Assembly: GCA_051294905.1 (NCBI GenBank) | Contig: CM119383.1 | Span: 2,852,001-2,916,000 of the forward strand | DNA: 64,000 bases | Source: Botryllus schlosseri | Taxonomy: Eukaryota | Direction: 5' to 3' | Notes under the pieces: generated by a model | What the model was told of the DNA's origin: nothing | The model's database searches: none | What the model saw: the letters and a program-made list of their open reading frames with translations, nothing else | In this document: piece after piece, positions 42,501 to 56,604 of the stretch | Numbering within the stretch: position 1 is the stretch's first letter | How the letters are laid out: every line of letters starts with the position of its first letter | Made by a program: the position numbers and the translations under genes

Positions 42501-45500
42501 GTCGCGTCCAAGTCCAACTCACAAACTTCAGTCATGAATCGTCTTAGGGTCAGGTTTTGTCGTCATGAATTGGAAATGTGGCGTAATAGTAAATCTTCCA
42601 CTGCATGGTAGCGTTTGCAATTGATGTGATAGTGATGTTTGATGAATATAGTTTCAGGCTTTCGGAGCAATGTCAGAGGGAATTTTCACTTTATAAGCTG
42701 AAAAGATATATATGACACTTAGATATTGTCAAATTAATAAAAATCTAAAATGTCGCCGCGGGCCGCCCAAAATGCTCTGGCGGGCCGCGTGTTTGAGACC
42801 TCTGACGTATGGTATATAGCTATTTAATCAGGTCAGCAAGGAAACCATGGCCATGCTGTGGCCTACGTGACGTATAGTTGGTTGCATCCTGAGTGTTGTT
42901 TGTTCTACTTATTCATGTTATTATCGGTGGCGAGTAATGGTACTATCCACAGCTGTAACCCCAATGGATTCTTCGGCGATTGAACATTTCTATTCCTGGG
43001 GTCCGTACTCCGTAGACCCTTTCGGGGTACGAAGCATCACATCAGGGGGTACGAGATGCATTGTGGAATTATGCATATATGATGTGGAATATTTTCTGGG
43101 CCAATTTATTCAACTGGAAAATATTCTTCGCGCTAGTCGCGATTTTATGTGAATGGGCTTTCTGATTTTAATATAGGTGCCATCGCAAATTGTGTTAAAA
43201 ATGGACTGGGAGTACGAGAAATCTTATTGAAAGCTCAAGGGTACGATCGCTAAAAGCTCAGGAACCAATGCTATTTCTATGGCACAATAATGATTATATT
43301 TTAATTGTTCTTGATCTGTTCCGATAATACTGGAAGGCAAATCTTACGCTGATTTAATTTGACTTTGACAATGACAGTAAACACAGCCTACTTAACAGGA
43401 CTATATAAGAAACACGGGTTATGCTATACAGCAGTGGTCGGGAACCTATGGCTCGCGAGCCACATATGGCTCTTTTGGGTATAAGATGTGGCTCTTTGAC
43501 ATGTTTTTAATTTTGTACCTAATTTTATCGATATTGCAGCAACTTGTTAGTAAATTATCACAACGGACAGAATAGTTATTCTTGTGGCAGCATAAACATT
43601 TATTTGAGAGGTCAAGACAGTGCCGTATCCAGGTTAAGTGCTCGGACCCCTTTACAAAATGCTCAAATTTAAGTTGCTGTCGCGGCAGCGACCAATATCC
43701 CTCGCGAATTCGATGTACTCCGCATCGCGCTCTATGTAATCTTGGATTGTACCACACGTTATAGGAGATCAAAGAGAACTAGGACGTCTATATGACAATC
43801 TAGTTTTCAAATAGGCTACACATTGTCGGCCTGATCTACGCCGAGAAATGAACTGTTTTGGAAGTGACATTCCAATTACAAATCGAAATTACAAACCACG
43901 CTTGGCTATCCACGTTCTTCATTGATAAGTAGCTTTCTAGTAATTCCGTTAAAATGTAGGCGTTTAGTGCAACGTTTATGTTACCGCCGAATTGAGAAGT
44001 CGATCAATATTTAGATTTTCGGAATCAGTGCTGCAGTTATATTAGATAAATATCAATTATTTTAAATTCTGAGCTATTTACGAGGAATTGCGCTACCACA
44101 GGATGATTAGTAGCCTACCAGATTTTACAGAAAAAATACGGCGCCCACGACTAATCCAATGTAGTGAGTTCGAATTTGTACTACCATGACGTCACTAATT
44201 TTCAATTGTGACGTAACACTTGATTGACATGTATGGCTCTTTGGGACTTGAAATGGAAAATATAGGTCTAAAATGGCTCTTCAGAAGAAAAAGGTTCCCG
44301 ACCACTGCTATACAGCGCTCAAATGCTCTGATATCAGATCGAACTTAAGTAAATTACAAAATATTCTACATAAAATTGAGGCAAGTCAAAGGTCCACCAG
44401 CTGCAATGTTATAACCCGACAGATTTGACGATGTCATGATATGTCCTCTCGCATGATGTCTATAACTCAATATTTTAACAAAATATGCCCGGCGCAAAAA
44501 CAATTTTATTCAAATATTTGAAAATGTGATTTTTCCGTGCCAAGCGTGAATAGTATAATAGTAAATGACATTTTCACGATGTTTGTGGAATGCCTGTCTG
44601 CACGGTCCGTCAAATAAGGCCTTCTTGGAAATTATATGCATTGAATATACTACCCGTATATTATTGATGCTGCGGCCCGCGGCGTAATCAAAAACTAAAG
44701 AAATTGGCCCGCGAGCACATTTGAGTTTGATACCTCTGGTATAGAGTAATATCTTGTGTACCATTCCTCAGAGGTCTTGTCTTCTTCTATGAAATAAAAT
44801 GTTCAGAAATGAGCCTCCGATACCATCCGCTTAATTGGCATTATTGTAATAGTCATTGGTATTTAATTTTCGTCGGCGCGACCCCAGAGAATAGGCAAAC
44901 GACCCCATTGCGGTCGCGACCGCTAGTTTGGGAAACCCTGTACTAGAGGCGTAGGGGCCCAAATCAGACCGCAATTTCAGTCCGAGAGTTCGGATCAAAT
45001 GTACGCGAAAATGAATTCATTTCAGTTCCTATAATTTCGATGGTCTAACACGGGATGGATCAAATACCAACATCTTGTACCCGAACATGATAGCTACAGA
45101 CGAGCAAAATATTCTTTGGATTGTCGAGACCTCTGAACAGAGTCAACGAGGTTTTGAGCTTCAACTGGAAATCGAACTTGGTGAGAAGCATTCAAAGCTT
45201 AGGTTGAGTTGCCGAAATCGTATTTTCTTGCTGGAAAATGAAATCGATTTTGTATAGTACTGATGAAAACGTATTTTGCAGATGGTGATGATTGTGCATC
45301 ATCGCCATGTCTGAACGATGGGATATGTATCGACAAAAACTATGACTTCGAATGTAATTGCACAGCGGAATGGGCTAATAAAAGTTGTCAAACGCGTGCG
45401 TATAGATATTAGTTGGAACAACACCACGTCCGTAGCTTGCTCGGTATATTGTTTCGTCAGCTCGCCTAGACCCTGATGTGAATTGCATGCCTCACGAGAG

Positions 45501-48500: not shown

Positions 48501-51500
48501 TCTCCAAGTTTTTGCGAATGCAGGAATTCTAACCTAATTTGAAAAAAAAACTATGTAGCTATAATTATAGAATAATTATTCGGAAAAGCTGTAAATTTCC
48601 CAGTTGTCCAACTCTGGAAGTGAGGGCACTGCACAACGCCGTAACTTCCACGCCTCTTCAAGTTATTTCGTAACACAACATTCGTCATCCGAGCCGGGAA
48701 TTCGGGATCGTTTTGGGGATCGAAACATTCCAGAATCAATCGCTCAATAATTCTTAGCGACACCATATTCTTTTTGTACCAGGATCATGAAGAATACAAC
48801 GAAACTGAATACGTCAACGTTACAACTTCCATTACTGACACTGTATTCTACATTCGAAACCTACGTCATTACAGAACGTACGCTGTGGTGGTTCAGGTCA
48901 AAAACACAGAGGGAACAACGAATGCGGAAGCTGTTCCTGGCTGGACCAGTCCCGGAAGTATGCTCAACGTAACCAATGTTTAGTGAAATGATTTCCAATA
49001 ACTATGTATAATAAAGCACCATTGGAAATTTATGGAAAAGTAGCTGGAATCACATCTGATTCTGCAGAAAATGAATGGTCTTGTCCGAACGATTTTTGAA
49101 CTAATGACCTTTCATGCAAACAAACCTTCTGTATGTCTCACAGTACCTCGCGCTGTTGATGGATTCAGTGTAATTGCAACTGCGACTCAAATCAATATCT
49201 CATGGATCCCTCAATCTCCTTCTGTTGGGGAAACGACATACGACCTCAAACTTACAAACGCTACCGCCAATTGGATGAATTCTACCGACGTTACAACGTT
49301 CACGTTTACGGACCTGATGCCGTACACTAACTACAGCATCACAGTAAGCTGCATATTAATTAACATCAAGCTACGCTCAGCGATCTATTCTACTTGCTAA
49401 ACAAAATTTTATGTATCATAATTATTAGTCACCCGTTATTAGATTTAACTCAACATCTTAGCGGCGACCACGTTTTGTAATAATTCACCCTGTGATAACA
49501 CACAGTAGTTATTCCTGCAATACTAACTCAATATCGAAACGGGCATGATTGTCATTGTAGTTGATGTTTATCAGTACAGCAGATAGGCTATGGGTAGGTA
49601 GACAGTAGATACGTACCTATCGTTTCATTTTATCTTGTGGTGCTTTGAAATGATAAAATAATATATAAAGTGAATAAAGTGATACTGATACACGACCGTG
49701 TACGCCTTTGTAGCCTAATATTTTCGCGTATGTCGTGTTTAGATCAGTGGTTCTTGACCGCCGGTCCGCGACGACTTTTCTGCCGGTCCGCCGGGTGAAT
49801 AACAATTTTATCCCTTAATTTCAAGATGCAATTTGTTTAAGGCTTTCGATTGCTAAATTAAATAAAATGTCAAATTTTAAACACATTCAAAACTTCGTGA
49901 GGTAACATTGGGTCTGGAAAAGTATTTGATTTGACTTGAAGTTCAATCCGTGTCATTTGACGACATGCAAGCGACCAGTACAAGCTGACTCACTAAAACG
50001 TACAGTTTGCGCGATTATTCGTTTTCGATCAATTCATTTTGTGCGGGACAGTAACTGCCACACCCCAAACCCCCCAATTCGACCGGGGCCGAGCTTGACG
50101 GGGGCCCAAATTATTCGTGAATGAACATAAATTATAAAGTAATTTTTGAAACTTTATCCAACTTTTTCAATTGTTTTCGCGATAGTGTCGCAAAATTTCT
50201 TCATTATCGGGTGCGCTTCACACAAGAAATACGCTTAATTTATATAAATAGTCATTTCGGCATCAGCCATTACCGCGCCACGACGCACCAACACATAATG
50301 AAGTTTAGGCTAACATAAGTAGGCTTACCATATTTTGGAAATCTAAAAAGAGGACACTTTTTCAGAAATTTGCAACTTGCAAAACCGGAATACAATTCTC
50401 AAAAACCGGTGAATTTCTCCCACTTTGCGATCGGTTGACTAAAAAAAAAAGGTCATCTTTCCCGCTCACAGCTCAAAATACCGTTTTTCTCTCCACATTG
50501 CCAGGTGGATGACTGAAAAAAAAAAAAAAGTCATCTTTTCGCTCAGAGCTGAAATCACCGTTTTTCACTCCGAAATACCCGCGGGAGCGTCAGTTCTGTG
50601 CTAATTTGCGGCATATCACTCGCATTTTGCTCTAAATCTGACCTAAATTTTCAAAAAAGAGGACAAAATCTCAAAAAAAGGATAAAAGGGCGTCCTCCGA
50701 GGACACTTTCAAAAAAGTAAAAAAAAAGGACAAATCCTCTTAAAAGAGGACGTATGGTAAGCCTAAACATAAGACTCCGAAAAGTGTGGAAAAATTCGGC
50801 AGCGAGAAAACCTTAGCTGAAAACGACTGCACTTTTTGAACGAAAATTGCGATATATATATATATGTATAATTTTCCATCGACGCCTAAATGGTTGGCGT
50901 CGAATGTTACTGTCCTGGCAATCTGTACCCCACAGGACCAATGCCATACCACAGAGAAAATAATTTGACAGTGAAGAAGTAGCAATTTTGAATCGTGTTC
51001 GTCTTTTAGTTTAGAACGCTTCGGCGATTTCAATATCTATTCAAAATATAACAGACAGTAGGTCACAAAATAAATACACCCAACGAAGTAACTATTCCAA
51101 CTGGCCCGCCCTAACATGTTTTACTATTAACTACACGCCCTTAATATTCCAAGACGACTCCTCATTCAGCTTTACCCGAAAATCTTCTTATGGGATAAAA
51201 AATTTATAGTAATATATATGCATTGCAATTACCAATACTATGCAAATACCAATATTGTTGACCGATTCAGTCACGAATTATAGAAAATTTTCCCGCTCGG
51301 TGCGATTAGGTGACAAAAACTCTCTGCCTGCACTGAGTAGAATGAATATACTCACAAGTACTAGTGGAAACATCCACACAACTGTGGGGTATTGGGGGCT
51401 GGGGCCAAATCCCCAGGTGTTTGGTTTATCGCCCTATGGGGGGCCCAAGACCAACGTGAGCAAGATAGTACGATAAGGTGCTTGGCTCGACTCCGAAACA

Positions 51501-54500
51501 CTTCTTCTCTCGCTATTGTCGAAAAGTAGAATATTATTCGAGTGTGATCGGTTAAATCCATTGCCTTCTGTGCGAAAGACTGTAAGCGACTCTCGGCGGT
51601 AGCACGTTGGTTTGGGCAAGGCAATTTTACCTCGACTCAGCACAATCAATACCGTAAAATCACATGGATGTCATCAAGAACATAATTAAGTACGATCAAA
51701 ACCCTCAAGATGTCACTCTCTATCACAATATGCTTGCAAAAATGGTTGTATACGTTACGTTTTGGGGTGATTTCAATTTCTGAAGGTCCATCGGTCCGCC
51801 AAATATTTTTGGAAATTTTGCCGGTCCGCCAACGGTCCGCGAGGTGAAAAAGGTTGAAAGCCACTGGTTTAGATCATGATTCGTGGACATGGACATTGTT
51901 AAACAATAGCTCCGTGAAATTTATAATTATCGCATGAATTCCAAGGACCTCAGTTATCTCACAATTGGGCGTTATTTCAAGGTTACGGCGAAGACAAATG
52001 CCGGGAGCGCGGGACCATTTCTGAAAACCATTGAGACCGAACAGTACATTCCTAGTCGACCGCGAAATCTTTACGTTTTTCCGTTTAGTCCCGGTAGCAA
52101 TGTCTCGGTCAAATGGGAAACACCAGAATTCCCCAACGGCATAATCATCGCTTACACGTAAGCTGTCATACTGTATTTACAACTGTTGTTATGCTACCGA
52201 AATACCATGAAATTGTGTCTATATCCATTATTTTACCAGCCTAAAGGGGAGACGGGTCTTCCCAAGTTCAATAGTATACCAGATGATCTGAGCACTAATA
52301 CGTTCTCTAAGGGTGTCTCGACTTCATTGGTGATACTGTTATGTCTAGCCACCCGTCTATACGGTGTTTACTTTATCAAATTTCTGTTAACTGCATTTTT
52401 ATAATGTATTTGTAAGATTTAACAAATAAAAGATTCCCTCTCTCTATCCGCGAGAGTTGCACACTATTTATTCAGTGTGTATATACAGTGGTACATTGGA
52501 GTATTCGGTTGTATTAAGTTTGTGGCTAATCGATACCGAATTGAAAAACTCAAATTTAATATCAAATATAGCCTAACAATATGTAAATTTTGCAAGTCGT
52601 ATACGTTAACAGCCTGCCATTAACAGTTCCGAATGGAATGGATTGTGACAGGATCGTGGAAATAGCGTTGTCATTCTAGCCAGACATCAAAATTCATGTG
52701 TTGCAATATTGGCGCTATTATTCCATGATCGTGAACAGAAACTGTATATTTTCACATATCAGCAGTGGCCGGTATCGGATAATACTGATAAATATGAGCG
52801 TTGCGGTTCAACGTTGCGGTTCGAACCAAAGCGTGGGTTTTGGATCTGATTCGTCGTTTTGATTTTAGCCATACTTAAATATTGAGACAACATCCCACAG
52901 ATGCGAAATGGGCATACGGATAAACTGCCTCGATGCGACATTACCTAACGTCAATCTCAACAATGTGGCACAGCTAAGGTTGTGATTTACTAACAGAATC
53001 AAAGGTGTTAGCTTCGTGAAATCTATGTACAGACTAATCTTATTGCGTGACGTAATACTGTACGGTTGGATACGCTGTAAGCATGCTGGGTATTCCAATT
53101 CACGTACCGTATGTTTAATCAGGGTAACATGGTGGCCAGGAATAAGCCACAATGTCACCAATACCTCCTACGTAATTCAAAACTCGGGGTGCAGAACAAT
53201 CAACTCAATCAACGTAACAGCTTGGACTGAAGTGGGTCACAGTGACACCGCTAGCGCACCTGTTACCAAATCGCAGTCCGGTAAGATCGTGTTATATTGG
53301 TAGGTTAGCAACGCGACTAAATTACATATCTTCAGAACCATGCAGTCAAAGAGATCCCTTAAAGTTCGAGACGCTGCTTAAAAACTTTGCGTCTGGTGGG
53401 ATGTGTTTACCTTGCGATTTCGCAAAGCTTCAAAATTCTACGAGCACAACTGTCAGAGACAATTTGACATGCACTGAAACTTTGGTGATAGGATTCTACG
53501 GTATATCCTGTCCAGAGGTGATGGGAGCTTCTAAATTTGCTGTGGCCGAAATAGAATCAAACACCACCGAATTGAATCATTATATTTCCACTAAACACAC
53601 TTTCGTGGAAGGTACTCAAAGACGCAAGACCCTCATCCCCCCGGTCGACAATAAACTAGTTTCAATCAGCGTTTTGAATCCGGAACAGCAAGATTCCACT
53701 GGACTCATTACTTTTTCGTATGCTATCGACTATGACAGCGTGTTCAGGAAATATTCTTACGACTTATCGTTCGATACAAGCCAAGAAGGATTGCTTCGCA
53801 CATCGTACAGATACTCAAGTCACAAGCCAGTAGGAGTCTATCTTCGGGAAGATTTGATATTTGATACTTACGGAATTGAGTGCAATGATCGTGGAGGTGT
53901 GGTTGAATGCGTCAGCAATCATACAACAGTATTCGCTGTCTTGCTTTCGGTGGAAACGATTGCGATACCAAGGAGTTTAAAGGTGAGTCAAAAATTGGAA
54001 ACCCTGTTCCCTGTTGATATGCACCGCAAACACAACATGTACAATTAGGAATATAAAATAAATGAATTCTTTATCTCGGAATCAAAAGCGCACAAGTACG
54101 ACACACGCGCGTCCACGTCGTCCAAATATCACATGATCGACCGAAAAGATCATCGCTCCATAAAATATGCCGAACGTGTATCCCGCCGGCCATCCGACAG
54201 TCGACGAGCGTGTCCACATTCAAGTCGAAATACAAGCAATTACTACTACATAAATACAGTCCATCTTCAAAATTACCGGACCACGACTGACCTATCGATC
54301 TTGCTTCCCATAACATGCCGCCGTATTCTTGTCGCTTTCTTTTTCAATACTGTCTTCTTTACTTTCATTCAGTGTGCATGCCTCATATTTACATTGCCTA
54401 GGCCAAGGTGGGTGTCCGATTCCATAGACTACTCCAAGTCACTTCGACATCTTCCTGTCTATTCATTGTATCGCATTTTTTGTGGTGCATTGAACTGTTA

Positions 54501-56604
54501 AAATTGCTAATAAACCAATGATGATGATGATGATAAAACCAGGATTAAAATTTGAGACAACGACGTCATAAGGGAGACGATGACGTCAGAACTTCCAAAT
54601 CCAAAATTGGTCGGAACAGCTTTTTTCTAGTATATCACCGTCAGCGATTTTCTACGCAACTCATCCCACATAAATAAGATAAGAAAAGGTTTGAAGTATA
54701 ACCAAATGAATATAGCTTTAAAATCAACTTTACCGAGATGCTGTTGTTGCTCGGTGCCGTTTTGAGTTTACACTTTGTTTACAGATCTTCGCGGTTGTCG
54801 CTGAATCCACATCAGTGTTCTTTCTATTCATAACTTTCGTGATACTACTGAGGGTCAGGAAACGAACCGGCGGAGAACGAATTCCCATCCAGATAAACCT
54901 ATCAGTGTCTTTGTTGCTTCTACATTTCTGGGTGCTATGGGGAGATATCGCATTGGAAATACCGGATTTCTGCAAAGCCATCGGGGTTCTCACTCATTTC
55001 TTTCTGCTTTCGTCAGGTATGGAACCATGTTTTGATATACGAAAAGTTGTCTAAAATCACGTGGTTCATTAGCCTAACGCACTAATTTCATCACCAAATC
55101 CAGTGGTGCTGAGTCTTACTATGAACGCTGACGGTGATTGTTAATATAATGAGACTTACTTTTCCTCTGTCACTCAGCGTTTTGGATGATGAACGAAGCC
55201 AATTTGCTATTCTTCAAAACCAGTAAATGGGCGGCTACGTCTACGAAACGCAGCAAGATCGTTGTCGTTACAATGTGTATCGGATGGGGAATTCCGTTTA
55301 TAATAGCGGGGATAACTGCAGCAGTCGGCTTCGGTCGAGGAGTGTACATGGAAAAAAGCGACTACCTGACGCACGAAGATTATGAAAAAGTGTCTATTTC
55401 CAAACAAGGACCGCAATACAATCATTGCTTGCTGAGCTCCAAAAACGGAACGCGTCTAGCCTCTATCATACCAGTAGCAATTATACTCGCATACAACCTT
55501 GTAATGGCAGTGAGAGCCGTGATATTCGTTCACACTAAGCGGGCAGAAGTCAAAAAGTACATGCCGTCCAACCAGGATGAAAAGACCAAGAGTAAAATGA
55601 TCTCGGAAACTCTCGACAACGTATTGCATTTACTGAAAGTGATATTTCTGCTTCTTCCGGTGCTTGGGGTACCGTGGATCCTCATACTATTATCAAGTGA
55701 GTTGCATATCATTTGCGAGCAATGCAGCTAAGGCGGCCTACTCAAATTACGAAGACTTGTCTCTATAATCACGGAAAGAAGAAAAATGGTCCACTCCGAA
55801 TAGCCTTATTATACGACTCTGTGTATACTTATAGTTGCGTAGTCCGGTGGAAATAAAACCTCAAATTCTTACTTAGCCGCAATAGAGCTGTTTCCAAGTC
55901 AAGCGAAAGATAAAATCAAACTGATGATCAGTGTAGATTGTGGAGATGCGTGACAGACTTTCGGTACCAATCGCCAATGACAGATTTCAAAATTGCAAGA
56001 TTCAAATTAGCGACTATATAATAGCCAAGAAGAAATGATGGTGCGACAAATAGGTAGGCCTGCAATGTTAGAAAATTACAACCCGTTAAAAATAACTACT
56101 TTGACTCCCACAAGCAATTGAGAACTCCAAAAAATACAGATATTGCTATATTGACTGCCTTTTATACTTTGGTTCCGTATATCTAGCATCACACACACGA
56201 TAACACCATGTATGCTATAGATTGCCATCGTGTCATACGATCTGACATGTAATATTGCGTACATATTTTATGTTTATAGACCTAGCTGAGTTATCATGAT
56301 GCGCGATTTTTTAACAGATTGGGGAAGCGAATCCATACAACTGAGCTTCCTATACGTAAACACTTTGGTGAGTGGATTGCAAGGAGTGTTCATATTTCTG
56401 ATTTATTGCGTTGCCGACACCAAAGTGCGGGGTGCTACAAGGAAATCGATCGCTACTCTCAACTCTATGTTGCCGAGCATATCCGATTCTCGATACGGTA
56501 TTAGCAAGCAAAGGCGCGCTGGAGGAAGTACCGACTTTATAGTGGAGTCAGGTGGTTCTGCGTCCCGTACTGAGACGAGACACAGCTCAACGTCGACACG
56601 TTGA
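34241..56604 (+). CDS. Adhesion-class GPCR, ~1362 aa: SP-EGF-like-FN3-FN3-CUB-like-EGF-FN3x4-short GAIN/GPS-7TM
   Basis: 20 phase-consistent GT-AG exons: 34241-34310, 35067-35183, 35319-35497, 35799-35928, 35991-36175, 39464-39599, 39751-39946, 45026-45180, 45282-45395, 45461-45561, 45783-45975, 46662-46780, 48783-48957, 49144-49343, 51982-52157, 53123-53280, 53336-53982, 54785-55016, 55178-55696, 56318-56604 (4089 nt). FN3 motifs GLEPYTPY, GLSPFTNY, DLMPYTNY, PSRPRNL...VKWETP. EGF DDCASSPCLNDGICID. GPS-like CVSNHTTVFAVLL. Family-B-like TM motifs THFFLLSSAFWMMNEA, GWGIP, LLPVLGVPW, GLQGVFIFLIYC. The first exon (MLKDGVFVIIAISCAEG) is the least certain. Confidence 0.92.
36460..36540 (+). repeat. 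(GAT)n tract, probably the tail of an extremely 5'-truncated LINE
   Basis: About 20 GAT units preceded by aaattgctaataaacca, the same 17-mer that precedes the (GAT)n tail at 54501-54534. Confidence 0.8.
36803..37919. mobile_element. hAT (Buster-like) MITE in an aGPCR intron, hosting a palindromic MITE
   Basis: TIR cagtgcttct(t/c)aacc at both ends. Flanks gttttgag / gtttaaag (6/8). Confidence 0.75.
37390..37612. mobile_element. Palindromic MITE family A (~220 bp hairpin)
   Basis: Arms ggctgacactcgtcaggggtaatcgtcagcaac..gtagagaat and its reverse complement. Single arms at ~1410-1492, ~4430-4512, ~10912-11005, ~14615-14700 and ~16292-16370. Confidence 0.82.
41070..41601 (+). mobile_element. 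MITE family B, full length
   Basis: TIR cagggttgtaa / ttacaaccctg. Perfect TSD gcgtatgg. Confidence 0.92.
41610..42804 (+). mobile_element. Family C hAT element (inner copy)
   Basis: TIR cagaggtctcaaac / gtttgagacctctg. TSD gcgtatgg / acgtatgg. Confidence 0.88.
43432..44307. mobile_element. hAT (Buster-like) MITE
   Basis: TIR cagtggtcgggaacct / aggttcccgaccactg. Perfect TSD ctatacag. Confidence 0.92.
46150..46560 (+). mobile_element. Degraded LINE: reverse-transcriptase fragment plus 3'UTR remnant
   Basis: 46155-46290 reads YLTVRHEMVSIFNNSSSPHLITCDVPQGSV then frameshifts, matching the CR1/L2 RT motif YLxxRxQxV...GVPQGSVLGPxLF. 46360-46520 resembles 54290-54430 (gccaaggtgggt). Confidence 0.7.
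46453..46494. mobile_element. 42-bp palindromic micro-element, same family as 33496-33536
   Basis: cagatatatctagaact...agttctagatatctctg. Flanks tagctaag / gagccaag (6/8). Interrupts the LINE 3'UTR remnant. Confidence 0.7.
47015..48162. mobile_element. hAT-type MITE
   Basis: TIR caggggccggcgacc vs caggggtcggcaacc with gtgcca subterminal motifs. Flanks caataggg / aaatgggg (6/8). Confidence 0.72.
49745..51866. mobile_element. 2.1 kb hAT (Buster-like) element hosting a family G MITE
   Basis: TIR cagtggttcttgacc vs cagtggctttcaacc, with ccggtccgc motifs at both ends. Perfect TSD gtttagat. Confidence 0.88.
50320..50765 (-). mobile_element. MITE family G, nested
   Basis: TIR taggcttaccata / tatggtaagccta. 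Perfect TSD aacataag. Confidence 0.9.
54085..54534 (+). mobile_element. 5'-truncated LINE (CR1/L2-group-like): ORF2 C-terminus, 3'UTR and (GAT)n tail
   Basis: AHKYDTRASTSSKYH...RSIKY then, after a frameshift, TFKSKYKQLLLHKY, matching the HxYxTR...SIxY...FKxxxKxxLL ORF2 terminus. Ends aataaaccaatgatgatgatgat. Confidence 0.75.

What the first reader, a model, noticed from the sequence alone, without database searches (positions are those of the whole stretch)
53336..53982. Single-exon mini-GAIN with a rewired GPS: Trp and three of four canonical Cys replaced
Seen: only ~215 aa lie between the last FN3 and TM1, ending KPVGVYLREDLIFDTYGIECNDRGGVVECVSNHTTVFAVLL. Established: the canonical GPS is CxxW...WxxxGC...CxCxHL/TxFAVLM, with two disulfides. 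Inference from alignment by eye: C1 is G, WxxxGC is FxxxGI, C4 is S, and a new Cys eight residues before C3 could form a replacement disulfide. The catalytic His, the +1 Thr (HT/T) and the Stachel TVFAVLL are intact. Autoproteolysis may persist on a remodelled scaffold.
Basis: partly seen in the sequence, partly recalled or inferred. Interest (0 to 1): 0.7.

Follow-up and report, generated by a model that had tools for sequence, protein, structure and literature searches.

The report
Compact GAIN domain with rewired cysteines
One exon of an expressed sea-squirt-type adhesion receptor gene encodes a small but complete self-cleavage (GAIN) domain that has lost both hallmark tryptophans and three of its four hallmark cysteines yet keeps the cleavage residues and built-in agonist, a real, rare but modest lineage-specific variant of a well-known domain.

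Summary
Exon 53336-53982 (+) has its splice junctions shown by transcript contigs from two studies and by raw RNA reads. It encodes the 215 residues between the last FN3 exon and the TM1 exon of an EGF/FN3 adhesion GPCR.

Two AlphaFold2 models (pLDDT 73 and 71; 86-90 over the GPS) match solved GAIN domains first: CELSR1 and CD97 at Z 11.1, then GPR97, BAI3, BAI2, CL1 and GPR56. All 30 best Swiss-Prot model hits are aGPCR GAIN domains.

- C1 is Gly.
- CxFW is GVYL.
- WxxxGC is FDTYGI.
- C4 is Ser.
- A new Cys lies two residues after the old C2 position.
- His, the +1 Thr, the Gly and the Phe-position aromatic (Tyr) are kept.

In both models the new Cys lies opposite C3 in the last hairpin. A register-shifted disulfide is therefore plausible but was not measured.

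The small size is not new: G1, G3 and E5 have GAIN domains with 2-3 helices that cleave. The Cys and Trp pattern is rare. Only 4 relatives turned up among 1.84 billion representative proteins, and there is one paralog in this genome beside at least 85 GPS hits above Pfam's cut-off. Relatives with intermediate patterns show a stepwise loss.

Autoproteolysis is unproven. The residue before the cut is Thr, not Leu.

The parts
53123..53280 (+). Last exon of the final FN3 repeat. It is joined from an exon ending at 52157, and its last base is the first base of the Glu codon that continues into the GAIN exon.
   Evidence: Transcript contigs map 53123/53124-53279, and a loose end reads the end of the exon at 52157. 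The donor ACAC|gtaagc is at 52157. A 55-nt GT..AG intron leads to 53336.
53336..53982 (+). Single exon encoding the whole GAIN domain (215 full codons, window:53338-53982:+). It comprises a short helical N-terminal part (about residues 7-33, low confidence), a beta-sandwich subdomain B, the GPS and the Stachel.
   Evidence: splice joints; AF2 models; GAIN domains are the top structural matches.
53839..53841 (+). Tyr168. It sits at the position of the Phe of CxFW (S10.49) that pi-stacks on the catalytic His. The neighbouring C1 position is Gly166 and the Trp position is Leu169.
   Evidence: HMMER alignment to ADGRF1. In ADGRL1, F803Y keeps full cleavage (PMC13062082).
53872..53877 (+). Gly179-Ile180. 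This is the 'Gly-Cys' position, with the Gly kept and C2 (S12.50) replaced by Ile.
   Evidence: The Gly is strictly conserved in cleavage-competent human receptors, and the C2 disulfide is present in all human GAIN domains (PMC13062082).
53881..53883 (+). Cys182, a new cysteine two residues after the old C2 position. It is the proposed partner of Cys191.
   Evidence: It is conserved in the window gene, L002, P0001, P0002 and P0003 and absent from relatives with the canonical four Cys. In both models the hairpin strands 180-185 and 188-193 place residue 182 opposite 191.
53908..53916 (+). Cys191-Val-Ser193. C3 is kept and is invariant in all 10 aligned relatives. C4 is replaced by Ser.
53920..53928 (+). 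His195-Thr196|Thr197, the putative autoproteolysis site. The scissile bond lies between 53925 and 53926.
   Evidence: It aligns to H-L|T of ADGRF1 and ADGRG1. H195 is invariant and T197 nearly invariant in A3.
53926..53982 (+). Stachel (tethered agonist) and linker, TVFAVLLSV... up to the exon end. It forms the last beta-strand (198-210) of the model.
   Evidence: It matches the TxFAVLM consensus (PMC12716839).
54785..55016 (+). Exon encoding TM1, TM2 and the start of TM3.
   Evidence: Pfam 7tm_2 E 2.8e-6. The joints 53982|54785 and 55016|55178 are seen in transcripts.
55178..55696 (+). Exon encoding TM3 to TM6.
   Evidence: Pfam 7tm_2 E 8e-12; joints.
56318..56604 (+). Exon encoding TM7 (GLQGVFIF motif), the cytoplasmic tail and the stop codon.
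   Evidence: Joint 55696|56318. The spliced CDS from the GAIN exon to the stop is an open 561-codon frame.

Best explanation
The exon encodes the complete, compact GAIN domain of an expressed, lineage-specific (ascidian-type) adhesion GPCR. Its ectodomain carries EGF and several FN3 repeats.

The domain keeps the GAIN subdomain B beta-sandwich, and the Stachel is its last strand. The GPS scaffold has been remodelled:
- Both conserved Trp are gone (Leu169, Phe175).
- The C1-C3 and C2-C4 disulfides are gone (Gly166, Ile180, Ser193).
- C3 (Cys191) is kept.
- A new Cys182 sits one rung nearer the hairpin turn.

My inference is that Cys182 and Cys191 form a single cross-strand disulfide stapling the last hairpin (about 70% likely).

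The catalytic environment is retained. It consists of His195, the nucleophile Thr197, Gly179, and an aromatic residue (Tyr168) at the position that orients the His. The receptor therefore most likely works like other aGPCRs: the GAIN domain holds the tethered agonist TVFAVLL, and the agonist activates the 7TM domain when it is exposed.

Self-cleavage at HT|T is plausible (about 55%). It is not shown.
For: Shown:
- Gene model and expression. Spliced transcripts from two studies plus raw RNA reads support all four junctions. The frame is open for 561 codons to the stop, and 12 of the 19 listed transcript variants are synonymous.
- Context. There are fn3 and EGF exons upstream and 7tm_2 exons downstream.
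- Fold. Two AF2 models give pLDDT 73.1 and 71.2, pTM 0.71 and 0.70, and 86-90 over residues 160-210. Foldseek against PDB ranks CD97, BAI3 and CELSR1 GAIN domains first. VIA-align gives CELSR1 Z 11.1 (159 aligned, rmsd 3.6), CD97 Z 11.1, GPR97 9.7, BAI3 9.4, BAI2 9.2, CL1 8.5 and GPR56 8.3.
- Independent fold check. An exhaustive search with the second model puts six GAIN domains on top (Z 9.3-7.2). All 30 best Swiss-Prot AFDB hits are aGPCR GAIN regions (E 2.5e-6 to 2e-4).
- Sequence homology chain. The window profile finds P0001 (1.6e-47), P0003 of Styela clava (4.7e-14) and P0004 (6e-4). P0004 passes Pfam GPS at 30.4 bits. The profile also hits ADGRF1 in PDB (7.5e-4) and paralogs of this genome with the canonical four Cys (5e-10 to 8e-8).
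- Conservation. C191, H195 and F199 are invariant, and G179 and T197 nearly so, across 10 relatives at 13-44% identity.
- Hairpin register. Residue 182 lies opposite 191, and 180 opposite 193, in both models.

From the literature: F803Y keeps full cleavage in ADGRL1, and the Gly is strictly conserved in cleaving receptors (PMC13062082). GAIN domains with 2-3 helices do cleave (PMC13197933).
Against: - No cleavage data exist for this protein.
- The residue before the scissile bond is Thr rather than the usual Leu. L837A impaired cleavage in latrophilin-1, where that side chain sits in a hydrophobic pocket (PMC3321182).
- The two disulfides are described as holding the kinked GPS turn in place (PMC3321182). 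They are absent here.
- Receptors with an intact HxS/T motif, such as BAI2, can still fail to cleave (PMC13062082).
- Model confidence is only moderate. The N-terminal 60 residues differ between the two models (two helices against one).
The Cys182-Cys191 distance was not measured, and the disulfide rests on strand register and co-occurrence in five sequences.
- The exon has an odd number of Cys (seven), one of which (Cys23) is not conserved.
Confidence: 0.75

Rival explanations
1. It is a GAIN domain that folds and holds the Stachel but does not self-cleave. The receptor would then signal as an uncleaved holoreceptor (non-dissociation mode), and His and Thr would be retained for structural or agonist reasons.
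For: Thr is at P-1, and L837A impaired cleavage in CL1. The disulfides said to fix the kinked turn are lost. BAI2 keeps HLS yet is uncleaved. Cleavage-deficient aGPCRs can still function (PMC13197933).
Against: His195 is invariant across all 10 relatives, whereas known non-cleaving receptors often lose it (BAI3 has Arg). The Tyr at the Phe position and the Gly, both linked to cleavage competence, are kept. H-T-T also occurs in 7 of 50 other sampled GPS motifs of this genome, all with the canonical cysteines, so it is a lineage habit rather than decay.
Confidence: 0.4
2. The GPS is decaying in a redundant or dying gene. The missing Cys and Trp would then reflect relaxed constraint, with no compensating design.
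For: Tunicate aGPCR families are large and fast-evolving (PMC2396169). Other GPS motifs of this genome show scattered Cys losses, and one (L036) also lost the nucleophile.
Against: The gene is transcribed and correctly spliced. The frame is open to the stop and synonymous variants predominate (12 of 19). The same Cys pattern is conserved in a 45%-identical paralog on another contig and in two sequences from other samples. The 7TM motifs are intact.
Confidence: 0.05
3. It is not a GAIN domain but another beta-sandwich (ZU5/FIIND-like or a carbohydrate-binding-like module) that happens to end in a GPS-like string.
For: ZU5 and FIIND domains and axonemal proteins appear at Z 6-8. Model confidence is moderate. 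The Pfam GPS match is sub-threshold.
Against: GAIN domains fill the top ranks in four independent structure searches and cover residues 1-206. The domain lies directly before TM1 of a 7tm_2 receptor. Sequence homology reaches canonical GPS motifs.
Confidence: 0.03

Closest known systems
Compact GAIN domains of ADGRE5/CD97 (9mqr, 8ikj), ADGRG3/GPR97 (7qu8) and ADGRG1/GPR56 (5kvm)
   Same: The overall size is similar. About 200 residues precede the cut, against residues 171-382 in human G1. Subdomain A is short, subdomain B is a beta-sandwich, and the Stachel is the last strand. The whole model aligns to them (Z 11.1, 9.7, 8.3). These small GAIN domains self-cleave (PMC13197933).
   Different: They keep CxxW, WxxxGC, CxC and both disulfides, and have Leu before the cut. 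The window protein has one candidate disulfide at a shifted register, no Trp, and Thr before the cut. Sequence identity is only 12-15%.
Styela clava LOC120347314 (XP_039273165.2; P0003)
   Same: It is the only named relative. It is an aGPCR of 762 aa with a 7tm_2 domain, C4 is Ser, the extra Cys two residues after C2 is present, and it has an HTT site and a similar Stachel.
   Different: It still has C1 and C2, so it looks like an intermediate state. It has a lectin-like N-terminus (Lectin_C, E 0.062, weak) rather than FN3/EGF repeats. It is 24-26% identical over the GAIN region.
Ascidian 'Unclassified Adhesion' GPCRs (Ciona; Kamesh et al. 2008, PMC2396169)
   Same: This is a lineage-specific aGPCR expansion without vertebrate orthologs. 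Many members have short ectodomains with little more than the GPS region, like the relatives L056, L057 and P0004 found here.
   Different: The window gene has a long EGF/FN3 ectodomain. The Cys- and Trp-poor GPS is not described in that paper, and no Ciona protein was retrieved by the profile search.
Cleavage-resistant GAIN domains ADGRB2/ADGRB3
   Same: They show that the GAIN fold and Stachel can persist without efficient cleavage, and that residues outside HxS/T decide competence (PMC13062082).
   Different: B2 and B3 lack the Phe and Gly (and, in B3, the His) but keep both disulfides. The window protein is the reverse: it keeps His, the aromatic residue and Gly but lacks the disulfides.
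ADGRD1 and ADGRG2/G6 seven-transmembrane domains
   Same: They are the best PDB sequence matches of the family's 7TM region (P0003 against ADGRD1, 4.9e-21).
   Different: This is only distant class-B2 similarity. No orthology is implied.

Membership tests
GAIN domain (GPCR autoproteolysis-inducing domain) | Subdomain B twisted beta-sandwich fold with the Stachel as last strand | tested here: met
   GAIN domains are the top matches in Foldseek PDB, VIA-align (Z up to 11.1), an exhaustive VIA-align search (Z up to 9.3) and AFDB Swiss-Prot (30 of 30). The models are of moderate confidence.
GAIN domain (GPCR autoproteolysis-inducing domain) | Located immediately N-terminal to the first transmembrane helix | tested here: met
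   The exon is spliced directly to the TM1 exon. About 20 residues separate the cleavage site from TM1.
GAIN domain (GPCR autoproteolysis-inducing domain) | H-x-S/T cleavage triad | tested here: met
   His195-Thr196-Thr197 aligns to HLT of ADGRF1 and ADGRG1. The middle residue is an unusual Thr.
GAIN domain (GPCR autoproteolysis-inducing domain) | Two conserved disulfides (C1-C3, C2-C4) and two conserved Trp of the GPS motif | tested here: not met
   C1 is Gly, C2 is Ile, C4 is Ser and both Trp are replaced; only C3 remains. These residues are conserved features rather than strict requirements of the fold. Other GPS motifs of this genome also lack single pairs.
GAIN domain (GPCR autoproteolysis-inducing domain) | Pfam GPS (PF01825) above the gathering score | tested here: not met
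   The score is 14.3 bits against a cut-off of 22.5. The motif is not among the 86 hits of the own-genome scan. The relative P0004 passes at 30.4 bits.
GAIN domain (GPCR autoproteolysis-inducing domain) | Actual autoproteolysis | not testable with these tools
   This needs protein expression and a cleavage assay.
Adhesion GPCR (class B2) | 7tm_2 transmembrane domain with aGPCR motifs | tested here: met
   Pfam 7tm_2 gives E 2.8e-6 and 8e-12 on two exons. The TM6 P-x-L-G-x-P-W and TM7 GLQGVFIF strings are present in the spliced CDS.
Adhesion GPCR (class B2) | Tethered agonist (TxFAVLM-type Stachel) after the GPS | tested here: met
   The sequence TVFAVLLSV directly follows the putative cut. F199 is invariant in the family. 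Agonist activity was not tested.
Compact GAIN type (2-3 helix subdomain A, as in G1/G3/E5) | Subdomain A reduced to a few helices, with about 200-220 residues before the cut | tested here: inconclusive
   There are 196 residues before the cut. The models show one or two helices (7-18 and 25-33, or 7-22) at pLDDT 50-75, and the two models differ. The size is clearly in the G1/G3/E5 range.

The most novel reading that the evidence does not exclude
This would be a natural GAIN domain that still self-cleaves (at HT|T). Both universal GPS disulfides and both Trp would have been replaced by one register-shifted hairpin disulfide, Cys182-Cys191. Extant intermediates (canonical four Cys without Trp; then C4 lost with the new Cys gained; then C1 and C2 lost) would trace how the scaffold was rewired. 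That would show that the canonical Cys/Trp framework is dispensable for GAIN autoproteolysis. It would also provide a minimal, differently stapled GAIN domain for studies of mechanical stability.
Probability: 0.4. Interest if true: 0.5.

Novelty: new variant of a known kind. Interest (0 to 1): 0.38.

Why it matters
The two GPS disulfides and the Trp residues are treated as hallmarks of the GAIN domain. The C2 disulfide is reported in all human aGPCRs, and the disulfides are thought to fix the strained turn that makes self-cleavage possible.

A transcribed, conserved receptor that drops them while keeping His, Thr, Gly and the aromatic residue is a natural dissection. It could separate which scaffold features are needed for folding, which for cleavage and which for holding the Stachel. 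It could also help studies of how disulfide placement tunes the mechanical unfolding of the last four strands.

The find remains a small, fast-evolving, lineage-specific family. No function is known and no biochemical evidence exists.

Tried and rejected
- Word-indexed protein searches gave no new relatives. The exon peptide found nothing, P0001 found only itself, and P0003 found only Styela clava isoforms.
- The own-genome protein search found only one close paralog (L002, 45% identity).
- Model coordinates are not exposed to scripts. The Cys182-Cys191 distance and the His/Thr geometry could therefore not be measured, and only the DSSP strand register was used.
- RNA run X20 (organism B) laid no reads and is no test.
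- Rfam found nothing in the intron after the exon.
- The idea that small size makes this GAIN domain special was rejected after the alignments to CD97, GPR97 and GPR56 and the 2026 review.
- Pseudogene and non-GAIN beta-sandwich readings were considered and rejected (see rival explanations).
- dN/dS between the paralogs was not attempted, because 45% protein identity implies saturated synonymous sites.
- The 5' end of the gene was not defined. FN3- and EGF-like open frames on the + strand reach back to at least about 34.9 kb.
Full report
**What is in the sequence.** The stretch 53336-53982 on the + strand is one exon. It begins after a cag acceptor and ends at AAG|gtgagt. The peptide ends with the string containing GVYL, FDTYGIEC, ECVSNHTT and VFAVLL.

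The junctions were checked with public reads. Spliced contigs from two studies (X1 record 4, 1774 nt; X2 record 7, 2068 nt) carry the joints 53280|53336, 53982|54785, 55016|55178 and 55696|56318, and so do raw RNA-seq reads of X23. The first joint removes a 55-nt intron. All four are GT..AG.

The CDS spliced from the GAIN exon to the stop at 56604 is an open frame of 561 codons. Of the 19 transcript variants the tool listed inside it, 12 are synonymous. Two conservative changes fall in the exon, E171K and V192I in the 215-residue numbering used throughout this report. The gene is therefore real, expressed at low level and under constraint.

**Context.**
- Downstream exons are Pfam 7tm_2 (E 2.8e-6 and 8e-12).
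- Upstream + strand exons carry fn3 (E 7e-8 at 49044-49397, with weaker matches elsewhere) and EGF (E 1.6e-6 at 45242-45409).
- The exon directly before (53123-53280) completes the last FN3 repeat.
- FN3- and EGF-like frames continue upstream to about 34.9 kb. I did not define the 5' end.

**Is it a GAIN domain?** Sequence alone is weak. Pfam GPS matches only residues 176-202, at 14.3 bits against a cut-off of 22.5.

A profile of the window peptide and its paralog was searched against 1.84 billion representative proteins. It found only four relatives:
- P0001 (730 aa, 1.6e-47)
- P0002 (a fragment)
- P0003 (762 aa, 4.7e-14)
- P0004 (a fragment, 6e-4)

P0003 is Styela clava LOC120347314, so the family is of ascidian type. 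P0001 and P0003 are 7tm_2 receptors, and P0004 passes Pfam GPS at 30.4 bits.

The six-sequence profile hits the GPS of ADGRF1 in the PDB (E 7.5e-4), followed by G1, G6, L3, G3 and D1. In the window's own genome it hits paralogs with the canonical four Cys at 5e-10 to 8e-8, and these matches extend about 40 profile positions upstream of the GPS.

Two AlphaFold2 models, built on 6 and on 10 sequences, gave pLDDT 73.1 and 71.2 and pTM 0.71 and 0.70. Confidence is 86-90 over residues 160-210.
- Foldseek against the PDB ranks CD97, BAI3 and CELSR1 GAIN domains first.
- VIA-align gives CELSR1 Z 11.1 (159 residues, rmsd 3.6), CD97 Z 11.1, GPR97 9.7, BAI3 9.4, BAI2 9.2, CL1 8.5 and GPR56 8.3. ZU5 domains come only at about Z 7.
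- An exhaustive search of 48,161 chains with the second model again puts six GAIN domains on top.
- All 30 best Swiss-Prot AlphaFold entries are aGPCR GAIN regions.
- A language-model search also lands on GPS/GAIN-B clusters (a lead only).

The fold is GAIN.

**The rewired GPS.**
- C1 is Gly166.
- The Phe of CxFW is Tyr168, and the Trp that follows is Leu169.
- The second Trp is Phe175.
- The Gly of Gly-Cys is kept (Gly179), and C2 is Ile180.
- C3 is Cys191 and C4 is Ser193.
- HL|T is His195-Thr196|Thr197.
- An additional Cys182 lies two residues after the C2 position, giving C-x8-C.

In latrophilin-1 the disulfides are C1-C3 and C2-C4 (PMC3321182).

In both models the last hairpin is formed by strands 180-185 and 188-193 with a Gly-Gly turn. 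This places residue 180 opposite 193, the old C2-C4 pair, and residue 182 opposite 191. The new Cys thus sits exactly one rung nearer the turn, across from C3, in the same type of cross-strand pair.

That is what a shifted replacement disulfide would look like. It remains an inference from strand register, because the coordinates could not be read.

**A stepwise path among relatives.** The ten-sequence alignment A3 shows graded states.
- The more distant paralogs L056, L057 and L061 have all four Cys, the second Trp and no first Trp.
- P0004 and L055 have four Cys and neither Trp.
- Styela P0003 has C1, C2, the new Cys and C3, with C4 already Ser.
- The window gene, its paralog L002, P0001 and P0002 have only the new Cys and C3.

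C191, H195 and F199 are invariant, and G179 and T197 nearly so.

The window clade also shares four conserved Cys in the first 60 residues (C2, C26, C45, C58). Their pairing is unknown. The single-exon layout of the GAIN region is shared by L002, L055 and the P0004 locus.

**How rare is it?** A Pfam GPS scan of the window's 495-Mb genome found 86 hits, 85 of them above the cut-off. The window motif was not among them.

The 30 best hits are all fully canonical. Among the 20 weakest, five have lost Cys, none in this combination:
- L044 lacks C2 and C4 but keeps an HxT site (HAT).
- L034 lacks C2 and C4 and keeps HLT.
- L047 lacks C3 and C4.
- L036 lacks C2 and C4 and also the nucleophile.
- P0003, listed above, lacks C4.

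H-T-T sites occur in 7 of these 50 motifs, all with the canonical cysteines. Thr before the cut is therefore a habit of this lineage.

The exact pattern is rare: two genes here, plus P0001, P0002 and in part P0003. Partial Cys loss in GPS motifs, however, is not unique in this genome.

**Is the size unusual?** No. GAIN domains with only 2-3 helices in subdomain A (G1, G3, E5) are known and do autoproteolyse (PMC13197933). The human G1 GAIN construct spans residues 171-391. The model aligns end to end with CD97 residues 326-540 and GPR97 residues 45-249. With 196 residues before the cut, this domain is at the small end of the range. The helical N-terminal part is poorly defined, since the two models disagree.

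**Mechanism and its uncertainty.** I read this as a working aGPCR. The GAIN domain buries the Stachel as its last strand, and exposure of the Stachel activates a 7TM domain that keeps the usual TM3, TM6 and TM7 motifs.

For cleavage:
- His and Thr are invariant or nearly so.
- The Gly is strictly conserved in cleaving human receptors.
- An aromatic residue sits at the position that orients the His, and F803Y keeps full activity in ADGRL1 (PMC13062082).

Against cleavage:
- Thr replaces the Leu whose side chain sits in a hydrophobic pocket, and L837A impaired cleavage.
- The disulfides credited with holding the kinked turn are absent.
- BAI2 shows that an intact triad is not sufficient.

I put self-cleavage at about 55% and the Cys182-Cys191 bridge at about 70%. 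A non-cleaving GAIN domain that still holds the Stachel is the main rival. Pseudogene and non-GAIN readings are unlikely.

**Verdict.** The 'mini' aspect is ordinary and the cleavage claim is open. This is a new variant of a known domain, in a small lineage-specific family. It is of moderate interest as a natural test of which GPS features are needed for cleavage.

Noticed in passing
window 54043-54550 (intron between the GAIN exon and the TM1 exon): A dispersed repeat of about 475 bp. The first look found 4909 candidates in the genome, and the 40 scored were about 91% identical. RNA depth is in the hundreds to ten thousands, with many differences from this copy. There is no Rfam match. A related copy lies beside the GAIN exon of the distant paralog L055.
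   Followed up: partly
L056 (G000:C5:17921263-17924571) and L057 (G000:C14:4141758-4144937): Two apparently intronless adhesion GPCR genes (open frames of 679 and 676 aa). They have short ectodomains, the canonical four Cys in the GPS and an HT|T site. They are distant paralogs of the window gene.
   Followed up: partly
L044 (G000:C9:22042808-22043104), L036, L047, L034: Other GPS motifs of this genome have lost one canonical Cys pair. L044 and L034 lack C2/C4 but keep an HxT site, L047 lacks C3/C4, and L036 lacks C2/C4 and also the nucleophile. Loss of GPS disulfides has therefore happened several times in this genome.
   Followed up: partly
G000:C3 30.0-32.8 Mb and C4 1.2-5.6 Mb: Large tandem clusters of canonical GPS-bearing exons. 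Most of the 86 Pfam GPS hits lie in these two regions, which points to local aGPCR gene expansions.
   Followed up: no
window 53338-53520 (residues 2, 26, 45, 58 of the exon peptide): Four Cys in the N-terminal 60 residues are conserved between the window gene and L002, and four Cys stand in the same region of P0001 and P0002. They are absent from relatives that keep the canonical GPS cysteines. They may be added disulfides in the reduced subdomain A. Their pairing is unknown.
   Followed up: no
window 53123: Transcript contigs read T where the assembly has G at the first base of the exon. This is a synonymous Thr codon split across the 52157|53123 junction.
   Followed up: partly
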